This document shows, piece by piece, positions 347 through 63,392 of a DNA stretch of 64,000 nt. The notes below the pieces were generated by a model. It saw nothing but the letters and a program-made list of their open reading frames with translations, was not told where the DNA came from and made no database searches. The position numbers were made by a program, and so were the translations under genes. This DNA comes from Paramoeba atlantica (Eukaryota; Protista; Discosea). Location: contig CDRNVI010000083.1 in assembly GCA_977017575.1 (NCBI GenBank), positions 1-64,000 of the forward strand, written 5' to 3'. Position 1 is the stretch's first letter. Each line of letters begins with the position of its first letter.

Positions 347-3300
347 TCACTTGTTCCATCTCCAAAAAAAAAAAAAAAAACTTGTTCCATCTGCTCTATG
401 TTGGGTGGTAAGATTCGTAAAAACAAAATCATTAATTCCTAATGTACATGAATGGGGGCTGCAGCTAGCACCGTAGACCAGTGATGAGCCTGAAGTTCGT
501 ACTTGGGGTAATTGGAAAAAATCCCCGACCATGACTATGGAAAACCCGCCAAATATTGCTTGGCTCTCAGAAACTGCACAAAGTCTTTGATGAATTTGCC
601 ACAAAGTCTTAGTTGACACACACGATGCTTCGTCGATCAAAACGGTATCCACGCCATTGAATTTTTCTTTTAACTTTTTCAGCCTCTGAGGGTTTAGATA
701 ATCTAGGAAAGCGCTCTTACTCTTTTTACTCCACGCTGCTGGGAAACAGAATCCAGAATGTATGGTCTCCCCATTAATGTTGACAGCGCAAGCCCCCGAG
801 TATCCGAAGGCAAGTACGGATCTTGGGCGGAAAGCGTTCTTGGCTTCCATAAAGCATCGGCTGGTTTCACTTTTACCACACCCCGGACCTCCATGTAGAA
901 AGGCTTTGTATCCTTCTGACAATCCTATATGGTTTTCTGTTTGCTTTAGTGTGTTGAGAACGAATTGCTCTTGATCCTTATCCAACTTTTTGTCGAGAGA
1001 CCTATTCCTTATATGTTTTTCACCTAAACGAAAAATGAGCTCAACACTTTTGTTTATACTAAGAACTCGGGCTTTCGAGAACGGATTCTGATTCAAACTT
1101 TCCAATACATCTTCTTGCGTTGCATTATTTTGCTTGAGCTCATCAATATCATGATCAGGCGTTTGATTTGAAATTATCCTCCTGGATTTCCCAGCTGACA
1201 CCTTTATCTGAAACTTGTATGTTTTGTTGTCGAAGTTATCGCGACAGGATGTACTCATTGCGCCGATGCTCTGAGGCGCAGCATAGCAATGATTCGTTCT
1301 CTGATCCGATGTCCATGTATCTTTCAAAAGCCTTTCTACTTGATCTTCAAGTTCAACCAAGAAAAGTTCAGTTTCAACGTTTCTTTTCTTTCCTTTCTTC
1401 GAATTTGCTTGATGTTGTGCAAGGAGATCGTTCGCTTCCTGAATTCCATCCGCAGCTTCTTTTTCTAAACACCCAGTAGCTTCTGCAACATCTTGCGCTG
1501 TTTCTGTTAAGCCTTTTGATTTCCATTCTTCATAAGTAGTAGCTTCCTGGTGCCTAAACATGTTGATCATGCATCTTGGTTCTTCAAAGGAAGAATCCTG
1601 AATTCCGATTCTCAAGTTATTGATGATCTTAATTAAGAAAGAGCAAATTTCCGGAGGGTATTCCGTTCCTTCCACCTTTTTTCCCTCACTACACTCCTTG
1701 AGTATCTTCAAGTACTCTTTCCAGTCGCTTAGCCTATATGATATTTTCTTATCTTTTGAGAAGGGGCGCATAAGGGCAGAAAAATATTTCGCGTGTTTTT
1801 TTGCTAAAACAGTTGTAGAATGATCGCAATCTGTAGCGACATCCCGGAGATGTGGCCAGTGTGGTATATACCCTGGAGATGGGATAACATATTTGCTCCG
1901 TATTCGCTGAGTAAAAGTTTCAATCAGCGGATGTCCTTTCTTGAATGCGAATGTAGTGTTTCTTGATCTCCCTTTCTTGGTTTTACCAATTGTTTTCACT
2001 GATGATATGCGAACTCTCGCAATAGTGGCGTCGTAAAGGTAAAAATTTAAGAACTCAAGTTCTGTGCCTCGAAAGTAATAGTCCAGAGCCTTACTGCACA
2101 TTTCAGTAGACCCATCATCCCTTACAATCACATCAGAGAGGCCTTCATTATCTGATATTTCGCTATCAGTCTCTGTTTCGTCTTCCTGTACTCCTGAAAC
2201 GCCTTTGACCATTAATTTAGATGCCTGCCGTACATCCAAGCAGGAAACTATATGGCTGCATTCTTCCGACTCATAACCAAGGCAACAATACATGGCCAGC
2301 TGGGCCGACACTTCTTGCATTCCTAGTTGACTATTTCCAAGCCTATTGCAGAGCAATGTGTCTGCTGAATTCTCGTGCGATCTTCGGCTTCCGTATTTTT
2401 CTTTGTGTTTTGCTGCTTGAACTGCCCCAATACAAGTATTGATATCAAGCAAGTTTTTGGACAAATATTTAAAAAGATAGAAAGTAGTTATCGCTGCAAC
2501 GCAAGCTGATCCGAGAAAAACAACATTTGTATTGAATCCAAGGAGGCAGGACATGATCGAATTGTATTCTGCAGTATTTTTATCCCTTGATGATCTCTTA
2601 GGCAAGTACAATAGAGGGCGAAAGTCGGGTGACATATAACCAAAGAAAGAGGGCTCTGTACTTTCAGCACGGGCCGCCATATTTTCTGAAACTGTTTTTG
2701 CCACTACTTTTCCTGGTGTAGAACTTGATTGTTCTAACAAATAAAAAGCATTCAATGGCGTAACCTGGCGTGGGTATGCATATCGGCATTTTGTTGGCGC
2801 TACACCTATATTTTTGAAACATTTCTCCGTATGCACATGCTGTTGCACAGTTGATGCAACTCGATGCTCTCTGATATCCATGGCTTTCTGATTATCGAAT
2901 GGCGGGCATGGCTCTAACCCCACTCTTCCCCCGGCGCTTCTCGTATCTCCTTTATCCCACGGCACGGAAACCGTCATCCAATCAGAAACTAATTGGCTTA
3001 TACTGTTTCTTTCTGATTCCATATGAATCTTTTCGGAAGCATACTCAGCGAGAGGGATGCCCCATATAACAATATGCATATGCAAATTTCCTCTACCTTG
3101 TGTCTCAACCACCCCAAACATTCCCTTCATAATCTTGAAAATTCCGACGGGCATTTCTTCTGAAATAGCACTGACCGATTGGCCTGATTTTTTAAATCGT
3201 TTGTGCGGGACTACACCAAATATCGTGGTAAGTAACGCATCAATAATTAAATGAAATGTTTGCGCTGCATATGCAGGGTGATCTCGCACTTTTTGTACTC

Positions 3301-3649
3301 TTTGGTACGCATCGTCAATTAGAAAATCCTCTTGCACGCTTTTTGAAGAGGCGCATAGGTATTCCAGGGTAATTTTCATATCTGGATCGCATGGGGATAC
3401 GGTGGCGTAGAGTGTCGGATGACCCATGAACCCATGAATTGCCACCATTTGTTTAAAGCACGCATTCCGAGCTGCGTCGGAAAATGGAACATCACCAGTT
3501 ACAATATGCAGGACATTGCATGCTTCCAACAGAAGCTTACGATTTTCCTTTCGTTGAGGGTCCTTCTGTGCCTCCTTCAACTGCACAATTATATTTTCTT
3601 TTTCCAAAAGTTTCTTTGCTTTTTTCCACATATTGGGCTTGACCCTCAC
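347..3649 (-). pseudogene. Helitron Rep (HUH) plus Pif1-type helicase segment
   Basis: HPTLYATVSPCD, HUH motif, Walker A/B, LTTQHRADG. Frameshifted at 362-392 by a poly(A) insertion; the helicase frame resumes and stays open to base ~1. Confidence 0.9.
349..392 (+). mobile_element. CC-poly(A) insertion flanked by a 13-bp target-site duplication
   Basis: ACTTGTTCCATCT at 349-361 and 380-392 around CC+A run. Removing 31 nt restores the helicase frame HRADGTSEKDFEH. Confidence 0.85.
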
Positions 3650-55339: not shown

Positions 55340-58335
55340 CGTAAAGGGGGGGATCGTTTATTGTTATCAAATTTTTCGAGCATTTTTTGCTAACAATAAT
55401 CGCATGTTACAGTGCTCGCAAAAATTAGTAAAACTTTTATTGTAAAATAATAAAAAAGTTTTACTAATTAAAAATTCACTAATTTTTGTTTTACTAATTT
55501 TTGCGCTGCCCCCAAAAAATTTGCCAACTTGATAAAATGTCTTAAATACAAGAGAGCGATGTTTCGCGTTCGAGGAGCGAAGAAAGTTTTTTAAAAATAG
55601 GAATACAACGAACAAGAAAGTCAGAGATTCAGAAAAAAATCAGGAGCGGGGAAAGTAATATGTGTCTGTAGCACAGAGTAAAAAACACCCAGAAAAAATA
55701 ATATTAATAAAAATCTTGCTCATAGAAATATTGCTCACAGAAATCTTGCTCGCTTTCCGTTTCACTTTCCCCTTCAAATTCCGAACTGTCTTCATAATCG
55801 CTGCTATAGTCAATGTGATTATTGTGCATGCATTTGTATTTATCTGACTGGACCTTTCGAGGAGTTGAACGAATAGGCGTGCATATAGACGTAGCTTCAG
55901 AGAAAAATGTATTTTCTGCACTGGCGGATGTCTCAATTTCAGAAGAAGTCTTCCCGAAACCCCATAGATCTAGTTTTGCACACTTCTTTTGAGAAATAAA
56001 TAACTTCTTCTGAGCTCGACTCATGCCTTTTGTCTGTTCTTTCAGTTTGTATCCTTCCTCACGAGCTTGATTCTTTTTTTCCTTCTCAATTCTATTTGAC
56101 TCAAGCCGTTCTGAAAGACTGGGGTTGGGAGGACGACCTCGTTTCTTGCGTTGAAGAGAGACAATATGCTGAATATTTTCCTGTCGAATATCTTGGTCTT
56201 CGGGGGGTTCGATTTCATCAACGTTAACATTTACGTGCATTTCTTGTAGCTCATCTCCATGTCTGCTGACTGTTTCACGTTCGCTGTCGGTGAGCAAGGA
56301 TGCGTACGCGTCGGCTCGTGTCGGAGTACACATCTCAGTTTCATCAAAAAGAGCGGCAGTTATACCCCTAACTTTCCAAGAAGCAATGACTTGAGCACGA
56401 GTAATTTCTCGCATAGCTTTGGTAATTAGCGTGACTTTTTGCGTTCGGAGATGTGAAGCGGAAGACATAACCATTTCATGGACGGCATCTTCGACATTTT
56501 GACGGGCAAAAATGCGAGCAACATAATCATTGAAAAGTGCTCGAGCCTTGACTTTCAACCCAGATATCACAAACTGATCCGCCGGCTGAAAAACGTGAGT
56601 CATTTTAGGCGGAATTTCTACACACTTGCAGTTTTTGGAGGAAAGCGCCGGGGCAGAGTCTTTGTGTTGTGTTGCACCATCTATGATAAGGAGAGCGGGA
56701 GTGTTAACGTCTGAAAGTTTGCTCCTCTCCACATCAACAATATCAAGAAATCTTTCGAGAAATTCGGCCCAAGTGCTTGAATCCTGAAAGTGAGATCCTG
56801 TCCGAGCGCACTGTAGAACTCGATCGTTGTGTTCAATGTCGACAAACATGCGGGAGGTACCCTGAAAAATGAATTGTAGAAGATTCAAATCACCAGCAGC
56901 ATTCGTTAGCACCGTACAAGTGAAACCCCCTTTGCGATTCTGGATTGCAACACTTCTACTTTCTCCGACGTCAATTCGCTCCCAAGTCCACTTCATGTTT
57001 GAGCCTTCTGGAGAAAGACCAACGAAAAACTCGTCCGCGTTAAAAACAAGCTCTTTTCGAACACCGAAAGATTTTAGGCCACGTAGATGAGAAAAAAATA
57101 CATTAGCTGCCTGTGCAACTTCAATAGGTGTCACAGTTCGAGTTGTAGTTGCCCGTCGCACCTTAATGCCATTGCGGTGCATCCAAGAATTTGCCCAAGA
57201 AATCGAAAACTTCAACGTGCCACCGTTCAGCACTGTAGATCCCGTCTGTCGCTGTTCTCTGATACCTTTCGCAATGTTGGCTACGCGAGCTGCGTCGACG
57301 GCAACGCCAGTTCGTCGAATCAGCAAAAAAGCTTTTAACAACTGAGCTTCTTCGTCTTCCGTGAGAAGACTCTTTCGACCACTAGAACCAACGTCATCCA
57401 AACGCGCAATGCGCTTGTACTTGGTGATAGCGGCTGAACTGAGACTTCGATGAAATTTCAGCTCAAACTTTCGTCGAACATCTTCGCCCCGAAAAACACC
57501 ACGAGTGTGTTCGAATAACCAATTCTTTTGCTCATCTGTTAAGGAAGTTCCGGAGGGCGTGTTGCTAGACGAAGCACTTATCAGATTGCTGAGCAATATC
57601 ATTTCTCCGATGTCGTGCGACATAGTAATCTGAAAACTTTTCGTAAAAAAAAATAGAATTCCGAAAAAAAAAAAAATGTAAGGTGTAAAACCTGAATTTT
57701 GCAAAATGTTTTACTAATTAAAAATTTACTAATTTTTGTTTTACTAATTATTGTTACACTAATAATTGTGTACACTGTAACAATAATCGAACTTTTACCC
57801 TCCAATGTCAACATTACACGAGTTGCAATGAAAGTTCGAATATTGTTAACAATGAGAAGTATTTGGGCACTCTCTGGAGGTTGCTGAAGGTCACTGGTAA
57901 TCGCCGGAGCTACTAACGACTCTCCAATGACACCTCTTTAGGGAACTACGCAGTTTTCAATTGCCATACAGTTTTATCCAAAACTGAGTTATGGGATTCG
58001 AAGTGCGATGTCGGGTGAGGTACAGTTTACTTGACTTCTCAACGTTTTATCTCTGGAGGCTGCGATCGTCGGGCGACTGAAAGTCTGTTGTTTCAATAGC
58101 ATTGTTTCGCATATCGTTAAGCGTATCATTTTCCTTATCATGAACGATATAAAACATGACCATAAGGAACAAAAAAATTCGAAAGCCACACGAAAAAACC
58201 GAAATTAATTCATTGCTAACAATAATCGAATGTTAACAATAATCGAATGTTAACAATAATCGAATGTTAACAATAAATGAATTAATTCATTGTTAACAAT
58301 AAACGAATGTTAACAATAAACGAGCCCCCCTTTAC
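55340..58335 (-). mobile_element. pogo-family (Tc1/mariner superfamily) DNA transposon
   Basis: TIR GTAAAGGGGGG..TCGTTTATTGTTA at both ends. 17-bp AACAATAATCGAATGTT repeats at 58215-58325. Internal ~45-bp direct repeats at 55455 and 57705. Confidence 0.8.
55704..57623 (-). CDS. pogo/CENP-B-type transposase (HTH plus DD33D), uninterrupted
   Basis: GRKSLL, FSISWANSWMHR, VFNADE, LLIIDGATQH, PPKMTHVFQPAD; ~639 aa from MSHDIG. Confidence 0.9.
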   Translation of the reverse strand: MSHDIGEMILLSNLISASSSNTPSGTSLTDEQKNWLFEHTRGVFRGEDVRRKFELKFHRSLSSAAITKYKRIARLDDVGSSGRKSLLTEDEEAQLLKAFLLIRRTGVAVDAARVANIAKGIREQRQTGSTVLNGGTLKFSISWANSWMHRNGIKVRRATTTRTVTPIEVAQAANVFFSHLRGLKSFGVRKELVFNADEFFVGLSPEGSNMKWTWERIDVGESRSVAIQNRKGGFTCTVLTNAAGDLNLLQFIFQGTSRMFVDIEHNDRVLQCARTGSHFQDSSTWAEFLERFLDIVDVERSKLSDVNTPALLIIDGATQHKDSAPALSSKNCKCVEIPPKMTHVFQPADQFVISGLKVKARALFNDYVARIFARQNVEDAVHEMVMSSASHLRTQKVTLITKAMREITRAQVIASWKVRGITAALFDETEMCTPTRADAYASLLTDSERETVSRHGDELQEMHVNVNVDEIEPPEDQDIRQENIQHIVSLQRKKRGRPPNPSLSERLESNRIEKEKKNQAREEGYKLKEQTKGMSRAQKKLFISQKKCAKLDLWGFGKTSSEIETSASAENTFFSEATSICTPIRSTPRKVQSDKYKCMHNNHIDYSSDYEDSSEFEGESETESEQDFCEQYFYEQDFY

Positions 58336-59217: not shown

Positions 59218-60149
59218 CTATATACCATCATCTGATGTCCGTGCCGACGCGCGGTTTCTCCCCGCCTCCTCTCGCAGCAACGCCTCCCTCTCCCTTTGCT
59301 TCCTCCGCATCGCCTCCTTTCTCTTCTCAATCTCCTCCCTCATCGCGGTCAGCCGGCTTTCCCTCTCCTCCACCTCCCTCGCCCTGCCTTGCAAAATCTC
59401 CTGCTTCCTCCTCTCCAGCTCCCGTTTCTTCCTCAGCGCAAACAGCCTCTCCTGCAGCTCCTCATCCCCGCGCCCCACGCCGTGCTCCCGTTTCCGCAGC
59501 TCGGGGGCGATCGCGCGGGCGTGTTCCCACACCACCTCCATGGCCCCGCAGCCCTCCTTATAGCGCAGCTCCTCCACCTCGTCCTCCGTCAGCTGGGAGA
59601 CCTGCTCGATGGTCCAGAGGTCGCGCTCGAGGAGACGCTTCTGGGTGTGCACGGAGCAGCTGTCGAGGAAGGCGGTGAAGGTGCCGAGCGTGACGTCATG
59701 GTGGGCCTCGAGGTGGAGCTTCCACCAGCGGCGGTCCTCGTCGGTGATGCGGCCGTAGGCCTCGGTGATGAGCGCACGCGCGGGGGTGTGGAGGAGAGGG
59801 GGGGATAAGAAAGAGGGGGGGATAAGAAAGAGGGGGGGGATAAAAAAGAGGGGGGAGATAAAAAAGAGGCGGGTCGGGAAGAGGGTAGTCCCCGGGTGCT
59901 GCGGGATAACGCTGGGGAGGGTGGAAAGGAGAAGGGAGGAGCGGGTGGGGGAGGGGACCGGAGAAAAGGAGAGGGGTGGAGGGGGGAGGGGGGAGGGAAA
60001 GGTGGGGAGGGGGTAGAGGTGGAGAAGAAACGGATGGGGGAAGGGTTTTGGGAAGGGAGAGATTTGGTTTTGGGGGTTTGGAGAAAGAGGAAGCCAGGGT
60101 GGGGTGGGGGAATGATGGCGCGAGTGAAGTAGGGGTGTAGCGATTTCAT
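59218..60149 (-). CDS. Hypothetical protein with C-terminal coiled coil; apparent frameshift in the low-complexity stretch ~59800-59870
   Basis: Strong GC3 coding signal from ALITEAYGRITDEDRRWWK to the stop. The ATG at 60149 is in another frame. Confidence 0.6.
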
Positions 60150-60590
60150 TTTTACGTATGAAGAGGGTAAAAATATAGAAAAAAGATTTTGTAAAAACGT
60201 ATTTGCAAGGGTTTTACACGATTTCAACACACATAAAAAAACAGCTTCGCTATGGAATGTTTCCGACATTGGCTAGGGAGGAAGCACAGAAGAGAAAAGA
60301 CTGCGCATCTAACTAAAGCACGAAAAAATACATGGAGAAACAGGACGCCCAGAATCTACGTTTTTAAGCTTTTTTCACATTCACGTTTGGACATTCGCGG
60401 CACATCGCGTTCAATCCACGCCGTAGGAGCATATTTTTGTTTGCTTAAATATGCTGTAAAATCATTGTTGTGCAACGATATTTCAAATCCTCTTGAATTT
60501 CCTGGGAGATGACACAGATCCACAACTCCCGTGAGTCGATTGGCATGAAGATTAAGGTACTTCAACCCCGAGGGAAGCTTTGTAACATCT

Positions 60591-62475
60591 GGTGGATTGT
60601 CAATGTCAGTGCACCAAATTGTCATACTTAGTGCACCACAATTTATAGGATTGTCATACTCAGTGCACCAAGAGGTACATATTTTATCATAATTAGTAGC
60701 TTTTCTTTCTAATCGAAACTCGCACTTTATATGCCTAAATATCGAAGATTAACTCTTCAGGAGAGGCAAGACATTCAGACGATGCATGAGAGCGGATCGA
60801 CACGCAGAGAAATTGCCCGTTCTATAAAAAAATCTCACAGCACTGTTTGCCGAGAGTTGGTACGAAGCAAGAAAACGGGCAAGTATTACTTGGCTGGCCG
60901 TGCGAATCGTGTCGCACGAAATCGCCTGAGTAAAAAAGGGACGAGGCCTCAGATTATTCGTGGAGCCGTCGAAGCAAAAGTTAAAGCTCGGCTCAAAAAA
61001 TTTCATATCCCAGAACAAGTGGCCCATACATTAATCGTTGGTTCACAGGGTTCCCCGCCTACTTCCACGATTTATCGTTTCGTCCGAAGGGATAAGGATG
61101 CAGGCGGTAGCGTACACAAGGCTCTACGCTTTAGAGGAAAGCGCCCCTAAGGGCTCTACAGGCTGAATAATCGACCTCGAAAATGTCTCAACTGGGAGAT
61201 TCCTCAGAAATTTCGAGAGTTATTCCTGCTTTGAAGTAGGTAAAGACAAGTTAAAAGCAGAAGGATAAGTTGGAGCAGAAGGATAAGTTGGACCGTATAT
61301 TATTCAATAACGCTATATTACTCAGATTATTGCGGTGGTTGTAAAACTACCGCTCTACACTCGATTATTGAAAAAAAAGTGAACAAAAACAGTGAAAATA
61401 TAAAGAGGAACACAGTAATATAATGGAAGAAAAAAATATAAAAGGGGGCTCCGGTGGACCAAAACTGAAAAAAAAATTTGAAAAAAATGGGGGGTCCATG
61501 GGGGGGGTCCAGGGGGGGGGGTCCAGGGGGGGGGGCATGGTCGAGCAATTTTTTTTCGAAAAAATTAGTTTTCGAAAAAAAACCGCAGAAAGGGTAGCCG
61601 GGGGCTTGGCGCGCATTTTCCACCCCCCTACCCGGGGGTGACCCCCCCGCGTATCCGCATGACGGGTCCGCCAAGTTCGGATTTTTTCGGAAAAAAAATT
61701 TTGAAAAAAAATTCAACTTGGCGAAAAAAATGACAAAAAAAATATTTTTCCAAAATCGTTTCCCCTATTGTATTTTGATAGTTTGGGACCTGCACTAGCT
61801 TTCTACGCAGTTGTTTTCGCAAGGTATCACTTCTTCGAACCGTGGTGCGCCCCTCAAAATGACCCATTTTTGACTAAAAAAGGTGAAAAAGTATTTTTCG
61901 GACCTAAAGGGGCATTTTTGTGTCGAAAGAATGGTATGGTTGGAGTCGCATTCTCTACCCAATACGTTCGGTAGGCTTTCATTCATGCCTGCGAGTGATT
62001 TACCACGCGCAAATGTCGGATTTAGTGCTCTGAGAGCAAAAATATGCGAAAATGACCCCATTTTTACCCGAAATTCGGCTATTTTTGGCTATAATCTTTC
62101 CGTTTTCCAGGCTAAATTTTCTTTTTTAGGCTCTTCGTTAAACGCGGTGGTGGTTTTCAACTCGGAGAGCGTAGCATGAGTGACTTCTAAGTTGAAAACA
62201 ACCACCGCGTTTAACGAAGAGCCTAAAAATTATTCAATTTTACACTATATTATTCAAATTAACACATTTATACTTTTAAGTGCACTTTTTTATACTTTTA
62301 CACTCTCAGGTGTTATGCAGCAGTAGCACACACGTTCGTACGCGGTGACATGCCCATTGCTTTTTCTTGGTGCACTGAGTATGACAAAATGTCGACATTT
62401 CAGAAGGGTTGATTTTTTGGGTATCTTTGGTGCACTGAGTATGACAAAAGGGTGGTGCACTGAGTATGACAATCC
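60591..62475 (+). mobile_element. TIR-bounded element carrying an internally deleted IS30-family transposase, with a nested repeat module
   Basis: Ends GGATTGTCA..CAGTGCACCA inverted, three ~20-bp subterminal repeats per end, IS30-type ORF starting 140 bp inside the left end. Confidence 0.8.
60731..61234 (+). pseudogene. IS30-family transposase remnant (N-terminal HTH plus C-terminal tail; DDE core deleted)
   Basis: YRRLTLQER..SGSTRREIA..KSHSTVCREL, PEQVA, STIYR; then in the same frame after TAA 61148, LNNRPRKCLNWEIP. Confidence 0.85.
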
Positions 62476-63392
62476 AGGTCTATTGGTCTCTCAAATCTAT
62501 TTAAACACAAATCCAAGTTTACCAAGGAGCCAGGAAGCATTGTTAGGTCAAGAGATCCACTAAACTCGTTGCGATCTATAAACAAGTCAGTCATATTCGG
62601 TGGAAGAGTAGTCAGATCGACCGCCCCAACATGTTCATTTGCACTTAATCGCAGATTAATTAGAGTATGACTTAATGCAGCGGTAGGAAGTTGACCACCG
62701 AATTTCGTTACACCAAAGTAAGATGTACGCGCTATTCTGACCACGTGACGTGGACAGAACTCCCATGACAAATTTCCACAAGTTGCAGGCACATGAAAAA
62801 GAATTTCAATTACCCTTTGCTCCTTGTCACATACCTCCCAGGAGCATACAGGGGCAGAGGCATTGCACCAACTCGCAGGACGATTCTTCAAGTACTGAGT
62901 AAAGACTCGCACTTGATAATCATCTGAGGTGCTTGCAGAAGTCGTTTTGGAGCCGTAGCATCGATGTTTCCTTGGAGGACTGCTAGATGTTGGTGTATCA
63001 TCTGCTGCGTGTAACGTTAGAACGTGAACGAAAAAACCAATGAAGCAGAACAGCAGCATCGTACGCAAAACTTACAAATGGTATCACAAAAATTCTTCTC
63101 TAATAACGAAAAGTGTATCACAGTCGGGAAAACAAACAAAAAAAGTGCGAATGTAAATGAATAAAGCATTCGGAAAAACAGAGAATATTACTATTCGTTG
63201 ATTCCACATGAACGATACCTCATCTCCTTGCAAAGAACATGCCCTCTTTGCCTCATCAAACCCGTTGTACTCCCCTTAACTTACTGCATCGATAATAGCA
63301 ACGCCAAACACCTCAAAAATGCATCCCTGCGTCTTTGTTTCTCACCTGAAATGCCTCTTCACGAGAAGAGGCCCACTCTCCCCCTCGCCACT

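What the first reader, a model, noticed from the sequence alone, without database searches (positions are those of the whole stretch)
60591..62475. IS30-family insertion sequence apparently transposed into a eukaryotic nuclear gene
Seen: an IS30-type HTH N-terminus and the IS30-like LNNRPRKCL tail lie in one frame with the DDE core deleted. They sit inside matching inverted ends (GGATTGTCA, three subterminal 20-mers each) that split a host LRR gene in frame. The 6-9 extra nt at the junction are at best a decayed TSD. Knowledge: IS1016, IS256, IS5 and IS630 have eukaryotic counterparts (Merlin, Mutator, PIF/Harbinger, Tc1/mariner); I know of none for IS30. Inference: a horizontally acquired IS30 lineage became mobile in this kinetoplastid and gained eukaryote-style subterminal repeats. 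A chimeric insertion in a host-specific gene argues against simple bacterial contamination.
Basis: partly seen in the sequence, partly recalled or inferred. Interest (0 to 1): 0.88.

Follow-up and report, generated by a model that had tools for sequence, protein, structure and literature searches.

The report
IS30-type transposon inside a protist gene
A broken, non-autonomous copy of a bacterial IS30-type jumping gene sits inside a leucine-rich-repeat gene of a protist. Intact sister copies elsewhere in the same species show that this bacterial transposon family has settled and moved in a eukaryotic nuclear genome, which I could not find reported.

Summary

**The element.** It is flanked by a perfect 3-bp target-site duplication, TCT. 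Removing the element plus one TCT restores the leucine-rich-repeat (LRR) register of the host gene exactly.

**This copy is dead.**
- It keeps an IS30-type N-terminus (helix-turn-helix, HTH) and the C-terminal LNNRPRK tail.
- It lacks about 154 codons, including all three catalytic residues (the DDE triad).
- It carries a 9-nt insertion that creates a stop codon.
- Nearly half of it (about 61332-62228) is a nested insertion of an unrelated, very abundant hairpin-ended repeat.

**The family is real and has moved.**
- A public ENA assembly of the same species holds the same insertion on a second haplotype.
- That assembly holds eight further insertions at other sites. Six of these have perfect 3-bp duplications.
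- Three copies encode intact transposases of 315-317 aa with DD(33)E spacing. The one scored (P0154) reaches 245 bits on the NCBIfam IS30 model (cutoff 80).
- Two intact copies are 98% identical at different sites.

**Origin.** The eukaryotic transposases form one clade, sister to Verrucomicrobiota IS30 elements. Those share the GGYGGATT terminus and the 3-bp duplication but lack the tripled subterminal 20-mers.

**Limits.** No paper in the searched library reports IS30 in eukaryotes. The host's kinetoplastid identity is only weakly tested. First-stage readers of this scan flagged IS30 transposases 23 times, at least eight of them on other pieces of this genome.

The parts
60588..60590 (.). 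Left copy of the 3-bp target-site duplication (TCT)
   Evidence: Identical to 62479-62481. The same offset rule gives perfect 3-bp duplications in 7 of 9 independent insertions. A scan of all offsets has its only peak there.
60591..62478 (+). Whole element: a non-autonomous, internally deleted IS30-type transposon of 1888 bp, including a nested repeat of about 0.9 kb
   Evidence: Termini are GGTGGATTGTCA ... TGACAATCCAGG. De Bruijn contigs of public runs break at 60591 and at 62477/62478 (records 13, 15 and 5). Removing 60591-62481 restores the host LRR register.
60591..60670 (+). Left end: terminal GGTGGATTGTCA plus three 20-mer repeats at 60597, 60619 and 60651 (spacing 22 and 32)
   Evidence: The intact element in L067 has the same number and spacing of repeats.
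60731..61150 (+). Transposase remnant, N-terminal 139 codons (HTH DNA-binding part) ending in a TAA stop
   Evidence: Pfam HTH_38 at 1.1e-13. NCBIfam IS30 model positions 1-101. Aligns to residues 1-139 of the intact 317-aa P0160. The stop comes from a 9-nt insertion absent from L002 and L001.
61151..61234 (+). Transposase remnant, C-terminal tail (LNNRPRKCLNWEIPQKF...), in the same frame
   Evidence: Aligns to residues 294-317 of P0160. The deletion join is shared with the independent copy in L001.
61332..62228 (.). Nested insertion of an unrelated, very abundant non-coding repeat. Borders are good to about 5 nt. It ends in a hairpin with 40-nt arms at 62123-62229.
   Evidence: Absent from the same locus in L002 and from the copy in L001. 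Summed contig depth is 23,000-74,000 against 33-63 in the flanks. Hairpin shown.
62368..62478 (-). Right end: three 20-mer repeats at 62368, 62428 and 62453, plus terminal TGACAATCCAGG
62479..62481 (.). Right copy of the 3-bp target-site duplication (TCT)
62482..63068 (-). Host LRR gene, 5' part
   Evidence: ORF. It joins in frame with the 3' part after removal of the element.
60356..60590 (-). Host LRR gene, 3' part
   Evidence: ORF, with weak LRR Pfam hits. The restored junction reads PIDVTKLP, in register with the neighbouring repeats SLDLTMLP and AVDLTTLP.

Best explanation
The stretch 60591-62478 is a dead, non-autonomous copy of a transposon family that descends from bacterial IS30 insertion sequences and now lives in the nuclear genome of this protist.

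**Intact members (shown).** They are 1.42-1.45 kb long. Each carries one intronless gene for a 315-317-aa IS30-type transposase with an N-terminal HTH and a DD(33)E catalytic core. Each end bears the terminus GGYGGATTGTCA followed by three ~20-nt repeats.

**How it moves (inferred from what is known of IS30-family transposases).** The HTH part binds the repeated 20-mers. The DDE core cuts the ends and joins them to a target cut with a 3-bp stagger. Repair of that stagger leaves the 3-bp duplication.

**History of the window's copy (shown, except the last step).**
1. A deletion removed codons ~140-293, including all three catalytic residues.
2. This short form was itself copied to at least two sites, so it must have been moved in trans.
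3. One such copy landed in an LRR gene, duplicating TCT.
4. Later it gained a 9-nt insertion with a stop codon, and in this haplotype only, a 0.9-kb nested insertion of another repeat.

The likely helper is the intact subfamily whose 20-mers differ by one base (L067). That is inferred, not shown.

**Origin (inferred).** The family most likely entered by one horizontal transfer from a bacterium related to Verrucomicrobiota, then diversified into at least four subfamilies.
For: **Ends and TSD**
- There are 3+3 inverted 20-mers, unique in the window.
- At a fixed offset of 3 nt outside the GGATTGTCA core, 7 of 9 independent insertions have perfect and different 3-bp duplications: TCT, GTG, CCT, ATC, ACT, AGT, GAT.
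- That offset is the only peak among 64 offset pairs.
- Removing 1891 nt restores the LRR register.
- Contigs of public runs break at 60591 and 62477/8. One contig (X4 record 28, 0 mismatches) bridges the left junction.
- The same insertion, with both flanks at 98.7-99% identity, is in ENA contig ctg3921l (L002).

**IS30 identity**
- P0154 scores 244.8 bits against a cutoff of 80, over model positions 1-267 of 267.
- P0154 has Pfam HTH_38 plus a sub-threshold rve match of 30.7 bits (gathering score 32.6).
- D-53/54-D-33-E spacing is identical to a bacterial relative.

**Mobility and selection**
- L004 and L068 are 98.1% identical over exactly 1425 bp, at different sites, with TSDs CCT and GAT.
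- Their ORFs differ by 9 synonymous and 5 non-synonymous changes.
- The window/L002 copy and L001 share the same deletion join at different loci.

**The ends belong to this transposase**
- The 20-mers co-vary with the transposase subfamily.
- Verrucomicrobial sister ISs of 1214 bp start GGTGGATTC..., and have 3-bp TSDs CTG, ATA, GTT and TCC.

**Phylogeny.** Three eukaryotic sequences form one clade (SH-aLRT 100). It sits beside a clade dominated by Verrucomicrobiota (support 97). Best identity to any bacterium is 44%.

**Eukaryotic context.** The window encodes Helitron, pogo, WD40 and KLHDC4-like genes. Other copies lie beside UCH, Utp14, Nup84, RT and Merlin genes on contigs of 10-137 kb.
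Against: - No intact copy of the window's own subfamily was found, so the helper transposase is inferred.
- Two of nine insertions lack a perfect TSD at the fixed offset. L003 has CCA/CCT. L067 has ACGT shifted by one base.
- No empty-site allele and no excision or circle junction was seen. However, the reads tool gave only assembled contigs, which drop rare forms.
- The right junction is bridged only by the two assemblies. The best run contig reaches 18 nt beyond it.
- All eukaryotic relatives come from one ENA assembly, which may share raw data with the runs examined.
- The bacterial sample in the tree was chosen by similarity to the query, and the tree is unrooted.
- The host's kinetoplastid identity rests on weak similarity.
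Confidence: 0.9

Rival explanations
1. Bacterial contamination or an assembly chimera: a bacterial IS30 fragment was wrongly joined to eukaryotic DNA.
For: The transposase type is otherwise known only from prokaryotes. NCBIfam's IS30 model is built for bacterial and archaeal annotation.
Against: - The insert is bounded by a perfect TSD, and its removal restores an LRR repeat exactly.
- A second assembly/haplotype about 1.3% diverged has the same insertion.
- Four runs from three samples hold it.
- Nine insertions lie among eukaryotic genes on long contigs.
- Best identity to any of 185,579 bacterial and archaeal species genomes is 44%.
- The element carries a nested eukaryotic high-copy repeat.
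Confidence: 0.02
2. The inverted ends belong to another transposon superfamily, and the IS30 fragment is captured cargo.
For: Several subterminal repeats per end are typical of some eukaryotic superfamilies and were not seen in the bacterial sister IS. Merlin, pogo and Helitron elements are present in the same genome.
Against: - Intact elements of 1425-1445 bp hold nothing but the IS30-type gene between the same kind of ends.
- The 20-mers change together with the transposase subfamily.
- The terminal GGYGGATT and the 3-bp TSD match the bacterial sister ISs.
Confidence: 0.03
3. The lineage is real but was not acquired from bacteria by this organism's ancestors. It is either an old, vertically inherited eukaryotic lineage or came from another eukaryote or a virus.
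For: - The eukaryotic clade sits on a long stem (0.64).
- It has already split into subfamilies only 46-68% identical.
- No close donor was found (at most 44% identity).
Against: - In a search of 1.84 billion representative proteins, every hit above 55% identity came from one ENA assembly, and all further hits traced back did too.
- The clade is nested beside Verrucomicrobiota elements that share terminus and TSD.
Confidence: 0.12
4. The short form is kept because its 164-aa HTH-plus-tail protein is useful, for example as a repressor of transposition. It would then be more than a dead passenger.
For: The fused ORF is open in L002 (P0151, 164 aa), and the 3' part of the equivalent fused ORF is open in L001 (P0003, 103 aa), at independent loci.
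Against: - The window's copy has a stop codon and a nested insertion.
- L001 lacks the first 27 codons.
- No test of expression or selection was possible.
Confidence: 0.1

Closest known systems
Bacterial IS30 family insertion sequences, in particular the 1214-bp elements of Verrucomicrobiota MAGs (L013-L016, L020-L021)
   Same: - One gene for an HTH plus DD(33)E transposase that passes the NCBIfam IS30 equivalog (for P0154).
- C-terminal LNxRPRK motif.
- Compact size.
- Terminus GGYGGATT.
- 3-bp target duplication.
   Different: - It resides and moves in a eukaryotic nuclear genome.
- It is about 200 bp longer.
- It has three ~20-nt repeats at each end, instead of the one imperfect 25-nt IR seen in the bacterial sister IS examined.
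- It has produced short non-autonomous derivatives.
- Protein identity is at most 44%.
[quoted passage not shown]
   Same: - A eukaryotic DNA transposon lineage whose transposase clusters with one prokaryotic IS family.
- It keeps that family's TSD length.
- It has a narrow host range.
- Origin by horizontal transfer is proposed.
   Different: The prokaryotic parent family is different. IS30 is not among the IS-eukaryote links listed in that paper. The terms IS30EU and IS30 family gave no eukaryotic report in the library.
Merlin (IS1016/IS1595-related) in Bodo saltans and Perkinsela (PMC8101967)
   Same: It is an IS-related DNA transposon in kinetoplastid-type genomes. A Merlin-type gene lies on the same contig as one IS30-type copy (L003).
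   Different: Merlin has a different transposase family and an 8-bp TSD. It is widespread in eukaryotes. That paper describes Merlin as the first DNA transposon known in kinetoplastids and does not mention IS30.
MITE-like non-autonomous DNA transposons
   Same: The window's copy and L001 are internal-deletion derivatives. They keep both ends and were copied without a working transposase of their own.
   Different: They still carry a recognisable transposase remnant. Only two loci were seen, so copy number looks low. Contig depth over the element is about 3-6 times the flank depth, which the tool warns is not a copy number.

Membership tests
IS30 family (transposase) | Protein passes the curated IS30 family model (NCBIfam NF033563, equivalog, cutoff 80 bits) | tested here: met
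   - P0154 scores 244.8 bits over model positions 1-267 of 267.
- P0153 scores 162.6 bits and P0001 scores 104.4 bits.
- The next-best family is IS481, at 59.5 bits against a cutoff of 224.
- The window's own 139-aa remnant scores 39 bits. It is below cutoff because only the first 101 model positions remain.
IS30 family (transposase) | N-terminal HTH DNA-binding domain followed by a DDE core with 33 residues between the second D and E. The DD(33)E signature is from my own knowledge of ISfinder. | tested here: met
   - HTH_38 matches at 9e-13.
- Catalytic positions are D174, D228 and E262 in P0154.
- The spacing of 53/33 is identical to the verrucomicrobial relative.
- This is not met by the window copy itself, whose core is deleted.
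IS30 family (element) | Short target-site duplication of 2-3 bp (from my own knowledge of the family, checked here on bacterial relatives) | tested here: met
   Seven of 9 eukaryotic insertions have perfect 3-bp TSDs. Four copies of the bacterial sister IS have 3-bp TSDs.
IS30 family (element) | Compact element of about 1-1.25 kb with one imperfect terminal IR of 20-30 bp | tested here: inconclusive
   - Intact eukaryotic elements are 1425-1445 bp.
- The terminal 8 nt match the bacterial sister.
- Each end has three repeated sites rather than the single IR seen in the bacterial sister IS examined.
IS30 family (mechanism) | Transposition through joined IR-IR intermediates (circles or dimers with a 2-bp spacer) | not testable with these tools
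   Only assembled contigs were available, and no IR-IR joint was listed. Contigs drop rare forms, so this says nothing either way.
Eukaryotic class II (TIR) DNA transposon, resident and mobile | Several copies at different sites of a eukaryotic genome, each with its own TSD, including autonomous and non-autonomous forms | tested here: met
   - Nine insertions lie among eukaryotic genes.
- Two intact copies are 98.1% identical at different sites.
- A shared deletion derivative sits at two sites.
Kinetoplastid host | Host genes group with Kinetoplastea; long same-strand clusters of intronless genes; spliced-leader RNA | tested here: inconclusive
   - The best named matches of the KLHDC4-like protein are Leishmania, Perkinsela and Trypanosoma, at only 27-30% identity.
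- Large ORFs at 24968-57704 are nearly all on the minus strand.
- No Rfam family, including SL RNA, was found in the window.

The most novel reading that the evidence does not exclude
This is the first eukaryotic DNA-transposon superfamily derived from IS30 ('IS30EU').

- It would have been acquired once from a Verrucomicrobiota-like bacterium, plausibly prey of a bacterivorous flagellate.
- It would still be active or only recently silenced.
- Its adaptation to nuclear life would have included multiplying the transposase-binding site from one to three per end.

If so, it offers a rare, compact case in which the bacterial parent and the eukaryotic descendant share terminus and TSD. The steps of an IS becoming a eukaryotic transposon could then be tested at the bench.
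Probability: 0.55. Interest if true: 0.75.

Novelty: new variant of a known kind. Interest (0 to 1): 0.68.

Why it matters
Only a handful of prokaryotic IS families are known to have eukaryotic counterparts. The 2023 IS481EU paper lists them without IS30 and predicts that more 'ISxEU' lineages will turn up (PMC10045372).

This case would add one, with unusually clear evidence:
- intact and deleted copies, each with its own target-site duplication;
- a bacterial sister group that shares the terminal sequence and the duplication length;
- one visible structural change, the tripled subterminal sites.

It also widens the very short list of DNA transposons known from kinetoplastid-type genomes (PMC8101967).

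The window's own copy is only a dead member of the family. Its value is as a clean, datable insertion into a host gene that is shared by two haplotypes.

Tried and rejected
- **TSD offsets.** Two-, three- and four-bp duplications directly next to the GGATTGTCA core do not match. Only the offset 3 nt further out works.
- **Full-length copy of the window's own subfamily.** The protein searches found none. The closest intact copy is 68% identical over the N-terminus.
- **Earlier findings by sequence.** The look-up gave nothing.
- **Rfam scan of the window.** No match.
- **Protein atlas search with a host Kelch protein.** It showed a eukaryotic family but no useful taxon.
- **Two recent papers on free-living kinetoplastids.** They hold no text on transposases.
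- **Reads.** The first request for sequencing runs failed because the service was busy. It was repeated unchanged and answered. The reads tool returned only Logan contigs, so an empty site, circles and rare alleles could not be assessed.
- **Not attempted.** Structure prediction was skipped because sequence-level family assignment was already decisive.
Full report
**What is in the window**

Between 60591 and 62478 lies a block with matching inverted ends. The 20-mer TTGTCATACTCAGTGCACCA, allowing up to three mismatches, occurs three times near the left end on the plus strand (60597, 60619, 60651). It occurs three times near the right end on the minus strand (62368, 62428, 62453). It occurs nowhere else in the 64 kb, with none expected by chance.

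Inside, ORF 60731-61150 encodes 139 residues that match Pfam HTH_38 (1.1e-13) and the first 101 positions of the NCBIfam IS30 model. After a TAA stop, the same frame continues with GLYRLNNRPRKCLNWEIPQKF. Aligned to an intact relative found later (P0160, 317 aa), the two pieces correspond to residues 1-139 and 294-317. About 154 codons, including all three catalytic residues, are therefore gone.

The flanks are the two halves of a minus-strand leucine-rich-repeat gene.

**True ends and the target-site duplication**

I compared this copy with eight other insertions of the family, listed further down. In every one the element extends three bases beyond that core (GGT/GGC/TGT on the left, and its counterpart on the right). 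Directly outside lie 3-bp direct repeats:

| Insertion | TSD |
|---|---|
| window (and L002, the same insertion) | TCT |
| L001 | GTG |
| L004 | CCT |
| L005 | ATC |
| L065 | ACT |
| L066 | AGT |
| L068 | GAT |
| L003 | CCA / CCT (one mismatch) |
| L067 | ACGT, shifted by one base |

A blind scan of 64 offset pairs and three lengths has its only peak at this offset, with 7 of 9 matching. All other offsets, apart from the 2-mers nested in this 3-bp duplication, give three or fewer 2-bp matches.

Three further lines agree:
- Removing 60591-62481 (1891 nt) makes the host protein read ...RPIDVTKLPSGL.... This is in exact register with the neighbouring repeats ...SLDLTMLPGSL... and ...AVDLTTLPPNM....
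- Short assembled contigs of public runs break at 60591 and at 62477/62478, as expected at the borders of a repeat (records 13, 15, 5).
- The bacterial sister elements start with the same GGYGGATT and make 3-bp duplications.

**What else has happened to this copy**

A locus from ENA assembly ERZ24900291 (L002, contig ctg3921l) is the same place in a second haplotype or strain. Its flanks are 98.7-99% identical and it has the same insertion. The element there is about 1 kb, because window 61332-62228 is absent.

That block is a nested insertion of another repeat.
- Copies of it occur elsewhere (L001 2552-3045).
- It ends in a hairpin with 40-nt arms.
- Its summed contig depth is 23,000-74,000 against 33-63 for the flanks.

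The stop codon between the two protein pieces comes from a 9-nt insertion found only in the window's copy. In L002 (P0151) the frame is open for 164 residues. In L001 only its 3' part is open (P0003, 103 aa), because the first 27 codons are missing.

The deletion join itself is identical in L001, which sits at a different locus with a different TSD. The deleted form was therefore itself transposed, and that needs a transposase supplied in trans.

**The family in this organism**

A phmmer search of the 139-aa remnant against 1.84 billion representative proteins gave five strong hits (57-94% identity), followed by ordinary bacterial IS30 transposases at 35-40%. The five, and every further relative traced, come from the single ENA assembly ERZ24900291, on contigs of 6-197 kb.

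Among them are three intact genes:

| Protein | Length | Locus |
|---|---|---|
| P0154 | 315 aa | L004 |
| P0158 | 315 aa | L068 |
| P0160 | 317 aa | L067 |

- P0154 scores 244.8 bits on the NCBIfam IS30 equivalog (cutoff 80) over the whole model. The next family, IS481, scores 59.5 against a cutoff of 224.
- The catalytic spacing is D-53/54-D-33-E, the same as in a verrucomicrobial relative.
- The intact elements are 1425-1445 bp and contain nothing but this gene between ends of the same design. L067 has three left and three right 20-mers. The left spacing (22, 32) is the same as in the window and the right spacing is near-identical.
- L004 and L068 are 98.1% identical over exactly the predicted 1425 bp, at different sites, with different perfect TSDs.
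- Their ORFs differ by 9 synonymous and 5 non-synonymous changes. That is fewer replacements than neutral drift would give.
- The 20-mer sequence changes with the transposase subfamily (...CAGTGCACCA...CAGTGCAACA, TTATCATATCC..., TTATCATTTCC...). This argues that the ends and the protein belong together.
- The intact L067 subfamily differs from the window's 20-mer by one base and is 68% identical in the N-terminal domain. It is my candidate helper. This is inference.

**Is the host eukaryotic, and is the junction real?**

The window encodes a Helitron Rep/helicase, a pogo-type DDE_1 protein, a large WD40 protein and a KLHDC4-like Kelch protein. Other copies lie next to UCH, Utp14, Nup84, reverse-transcriptase and Merlin-type genes.

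Four public runs from three samples of one study hold the stretch.
- A contig of run X4 with no mismatches bridges the left junction (60503-60653).
- The best contig at the right junction reaches only 18 nt beyond it.
- The right junction therefore rests on the two assemblies.

The kinetoplastid label is only weakly supported.
- The best named matches of the Kelch protein are Leishmania, Perkinsela and Trypanosoma, at 27-30% identity.
- The large ORFs form a long same-strand cluster.
- No spliced-leader RNA or other Rfam family is in the window.

**Origin**

A scan of one genome for each of 185,579 bacterial and archaeal species with P0154 found 59 relatives. The best reach 41-44% identity over the full length and are nearly all Verrucomicrobiota (Akkermansiaceae, Opitutales, Puniceicoccales).

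In a maximum-likelihood tree of 71 sequences, the three eukaryotic proteins form one clade (SH-aLRT 100) on a long stem. The clade sits beside the Verrucomicrobiota-dominated clade, with joint support of 97.

The sister ISs, four identical copies in one genome, are 1214 bp long. They begin GGTGGATTCAGG... and have 3-bp TSDs CTG, ATA, GTT and TCC. They carry one imperfect 25-nt IR with no repeated subterminal sites.

So the terminus and the stagger of the cut are inherited, and the tripled binding sites look like a gain on the eukaryotic side. Three caveats apply. The bacterial sample was picked by similarity, the tree is unrooted, and no close donor exists in the collection.

**Comparison with what is known**

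The 2023 paper that introduced IS481EU lists the accepted links between prokaryotic IS families and eukaryotic superfamilies:

| Prokaryotic IS family | Eukaryotic superfamily |
|---|---|
| IS630 | Tc1/mariner |
| IS1380 | piggyBac |
| IS1595 | Merlin |
| ISAzo13 | Zator |
| IS256 | MuDR |
| IS5/ISL2 | Harbinger, ISL2EU |
| IS3 | IS3EU |
| IS481 | IS481EU |

IS30 is not among them. The Ginger paper mentions IS30 only as a distant relative of integrases. The term IS30EU does not occur in the library, and the other full-text searches turned up no report of a eukaryotic IS30 lineage. The Merlin paper presents Merlin as the first DNA transposon in kinetoplastids. The library does not hold Repbase Reports or most subscription journals, so prior description cannot be excluded.

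**Within this scan.** First-stage readers wrote 23 notes on IS30-type transposases, and the eight shown all lie on other pieces of this genome. They were leads only. I did not see those pieces, but the intact copies I found in the ENA assembly agree with them.

**Verdict**

The finding is real. This particular copy is a dead, non-autonomous, doubly damaged member. It belongs to a family that meets the sequence and TSD criteria of IS30 and has transposed in a eukaryotic genome. I rate it as a new variant of a known kind: an IS family newly seen as a eukaryotic transposon, with a modified end architecture.

Noticed in passing
window 61332-62228 (borders good to about 5 nt): A nested repeat of about 0.9 kb with extreme abundance: summed contig depth is 23,000-74,000 against 33-63 in the flanks. 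It ends in a hairpin with 40-nt arms (62123-62229). Its 5' end (GCGGTGGTTGTAAAAC) resembles one hairpin arm. This asymmetric layout recalls Helentron-type non-autonomous elements. It is absent from the same locus in L002.
   Followed up: partly
window 347-3649 (-): An ORF of 1100 aa with Helitron_like_N and PIF1 helicase domains. It is a Helitron/Helentron-type Rep-helicase and a possible driver of the abundant hairpin-ended repeat.
   Followed up: no
window 55704-57704 (-): An ORF of 666 aa with a DDE_1 (pogo-type) domain. It lies within the stretch 55340-58335 that another first-stage note calls an intact pogo transposon. A related 639-aa DDE_1 gene lies upstream in L002.
   Followed up: no
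L002 5908-6510 (equivalent to window position about 62511): The other haplotype carries a further insertion of about 600 bp in the same LRR gene, 30 nt from the IS30-type element. It is absent from the window. The gene is a repeated target or already a pseudogene.
   Followed up: no
L001-L005, L065-L068 gene tables: In about 7 of 9 loci the IS30-type gene points opposite to the flanking host genes. The Merlin paper discusses such an orientation bias in polycistronic genomes. The sample is too small to test.
   Followed up: no
window 59700-60110 and 61480-61545: These are G-rich low-complexity tracts: GGGGGATAAGAAAGA repeats and GGGGGGTCCA repeats. The second lies inside the nested repeat.
   Followed up: no
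L003 152-1111: A Merlin-type (DDE_Tnp_IS1595) gene of 319 aa lies 4 kb from an IS30-type copy. Two IS-derived transposon lineages therefore coexist in this genome.
   Followed up: no
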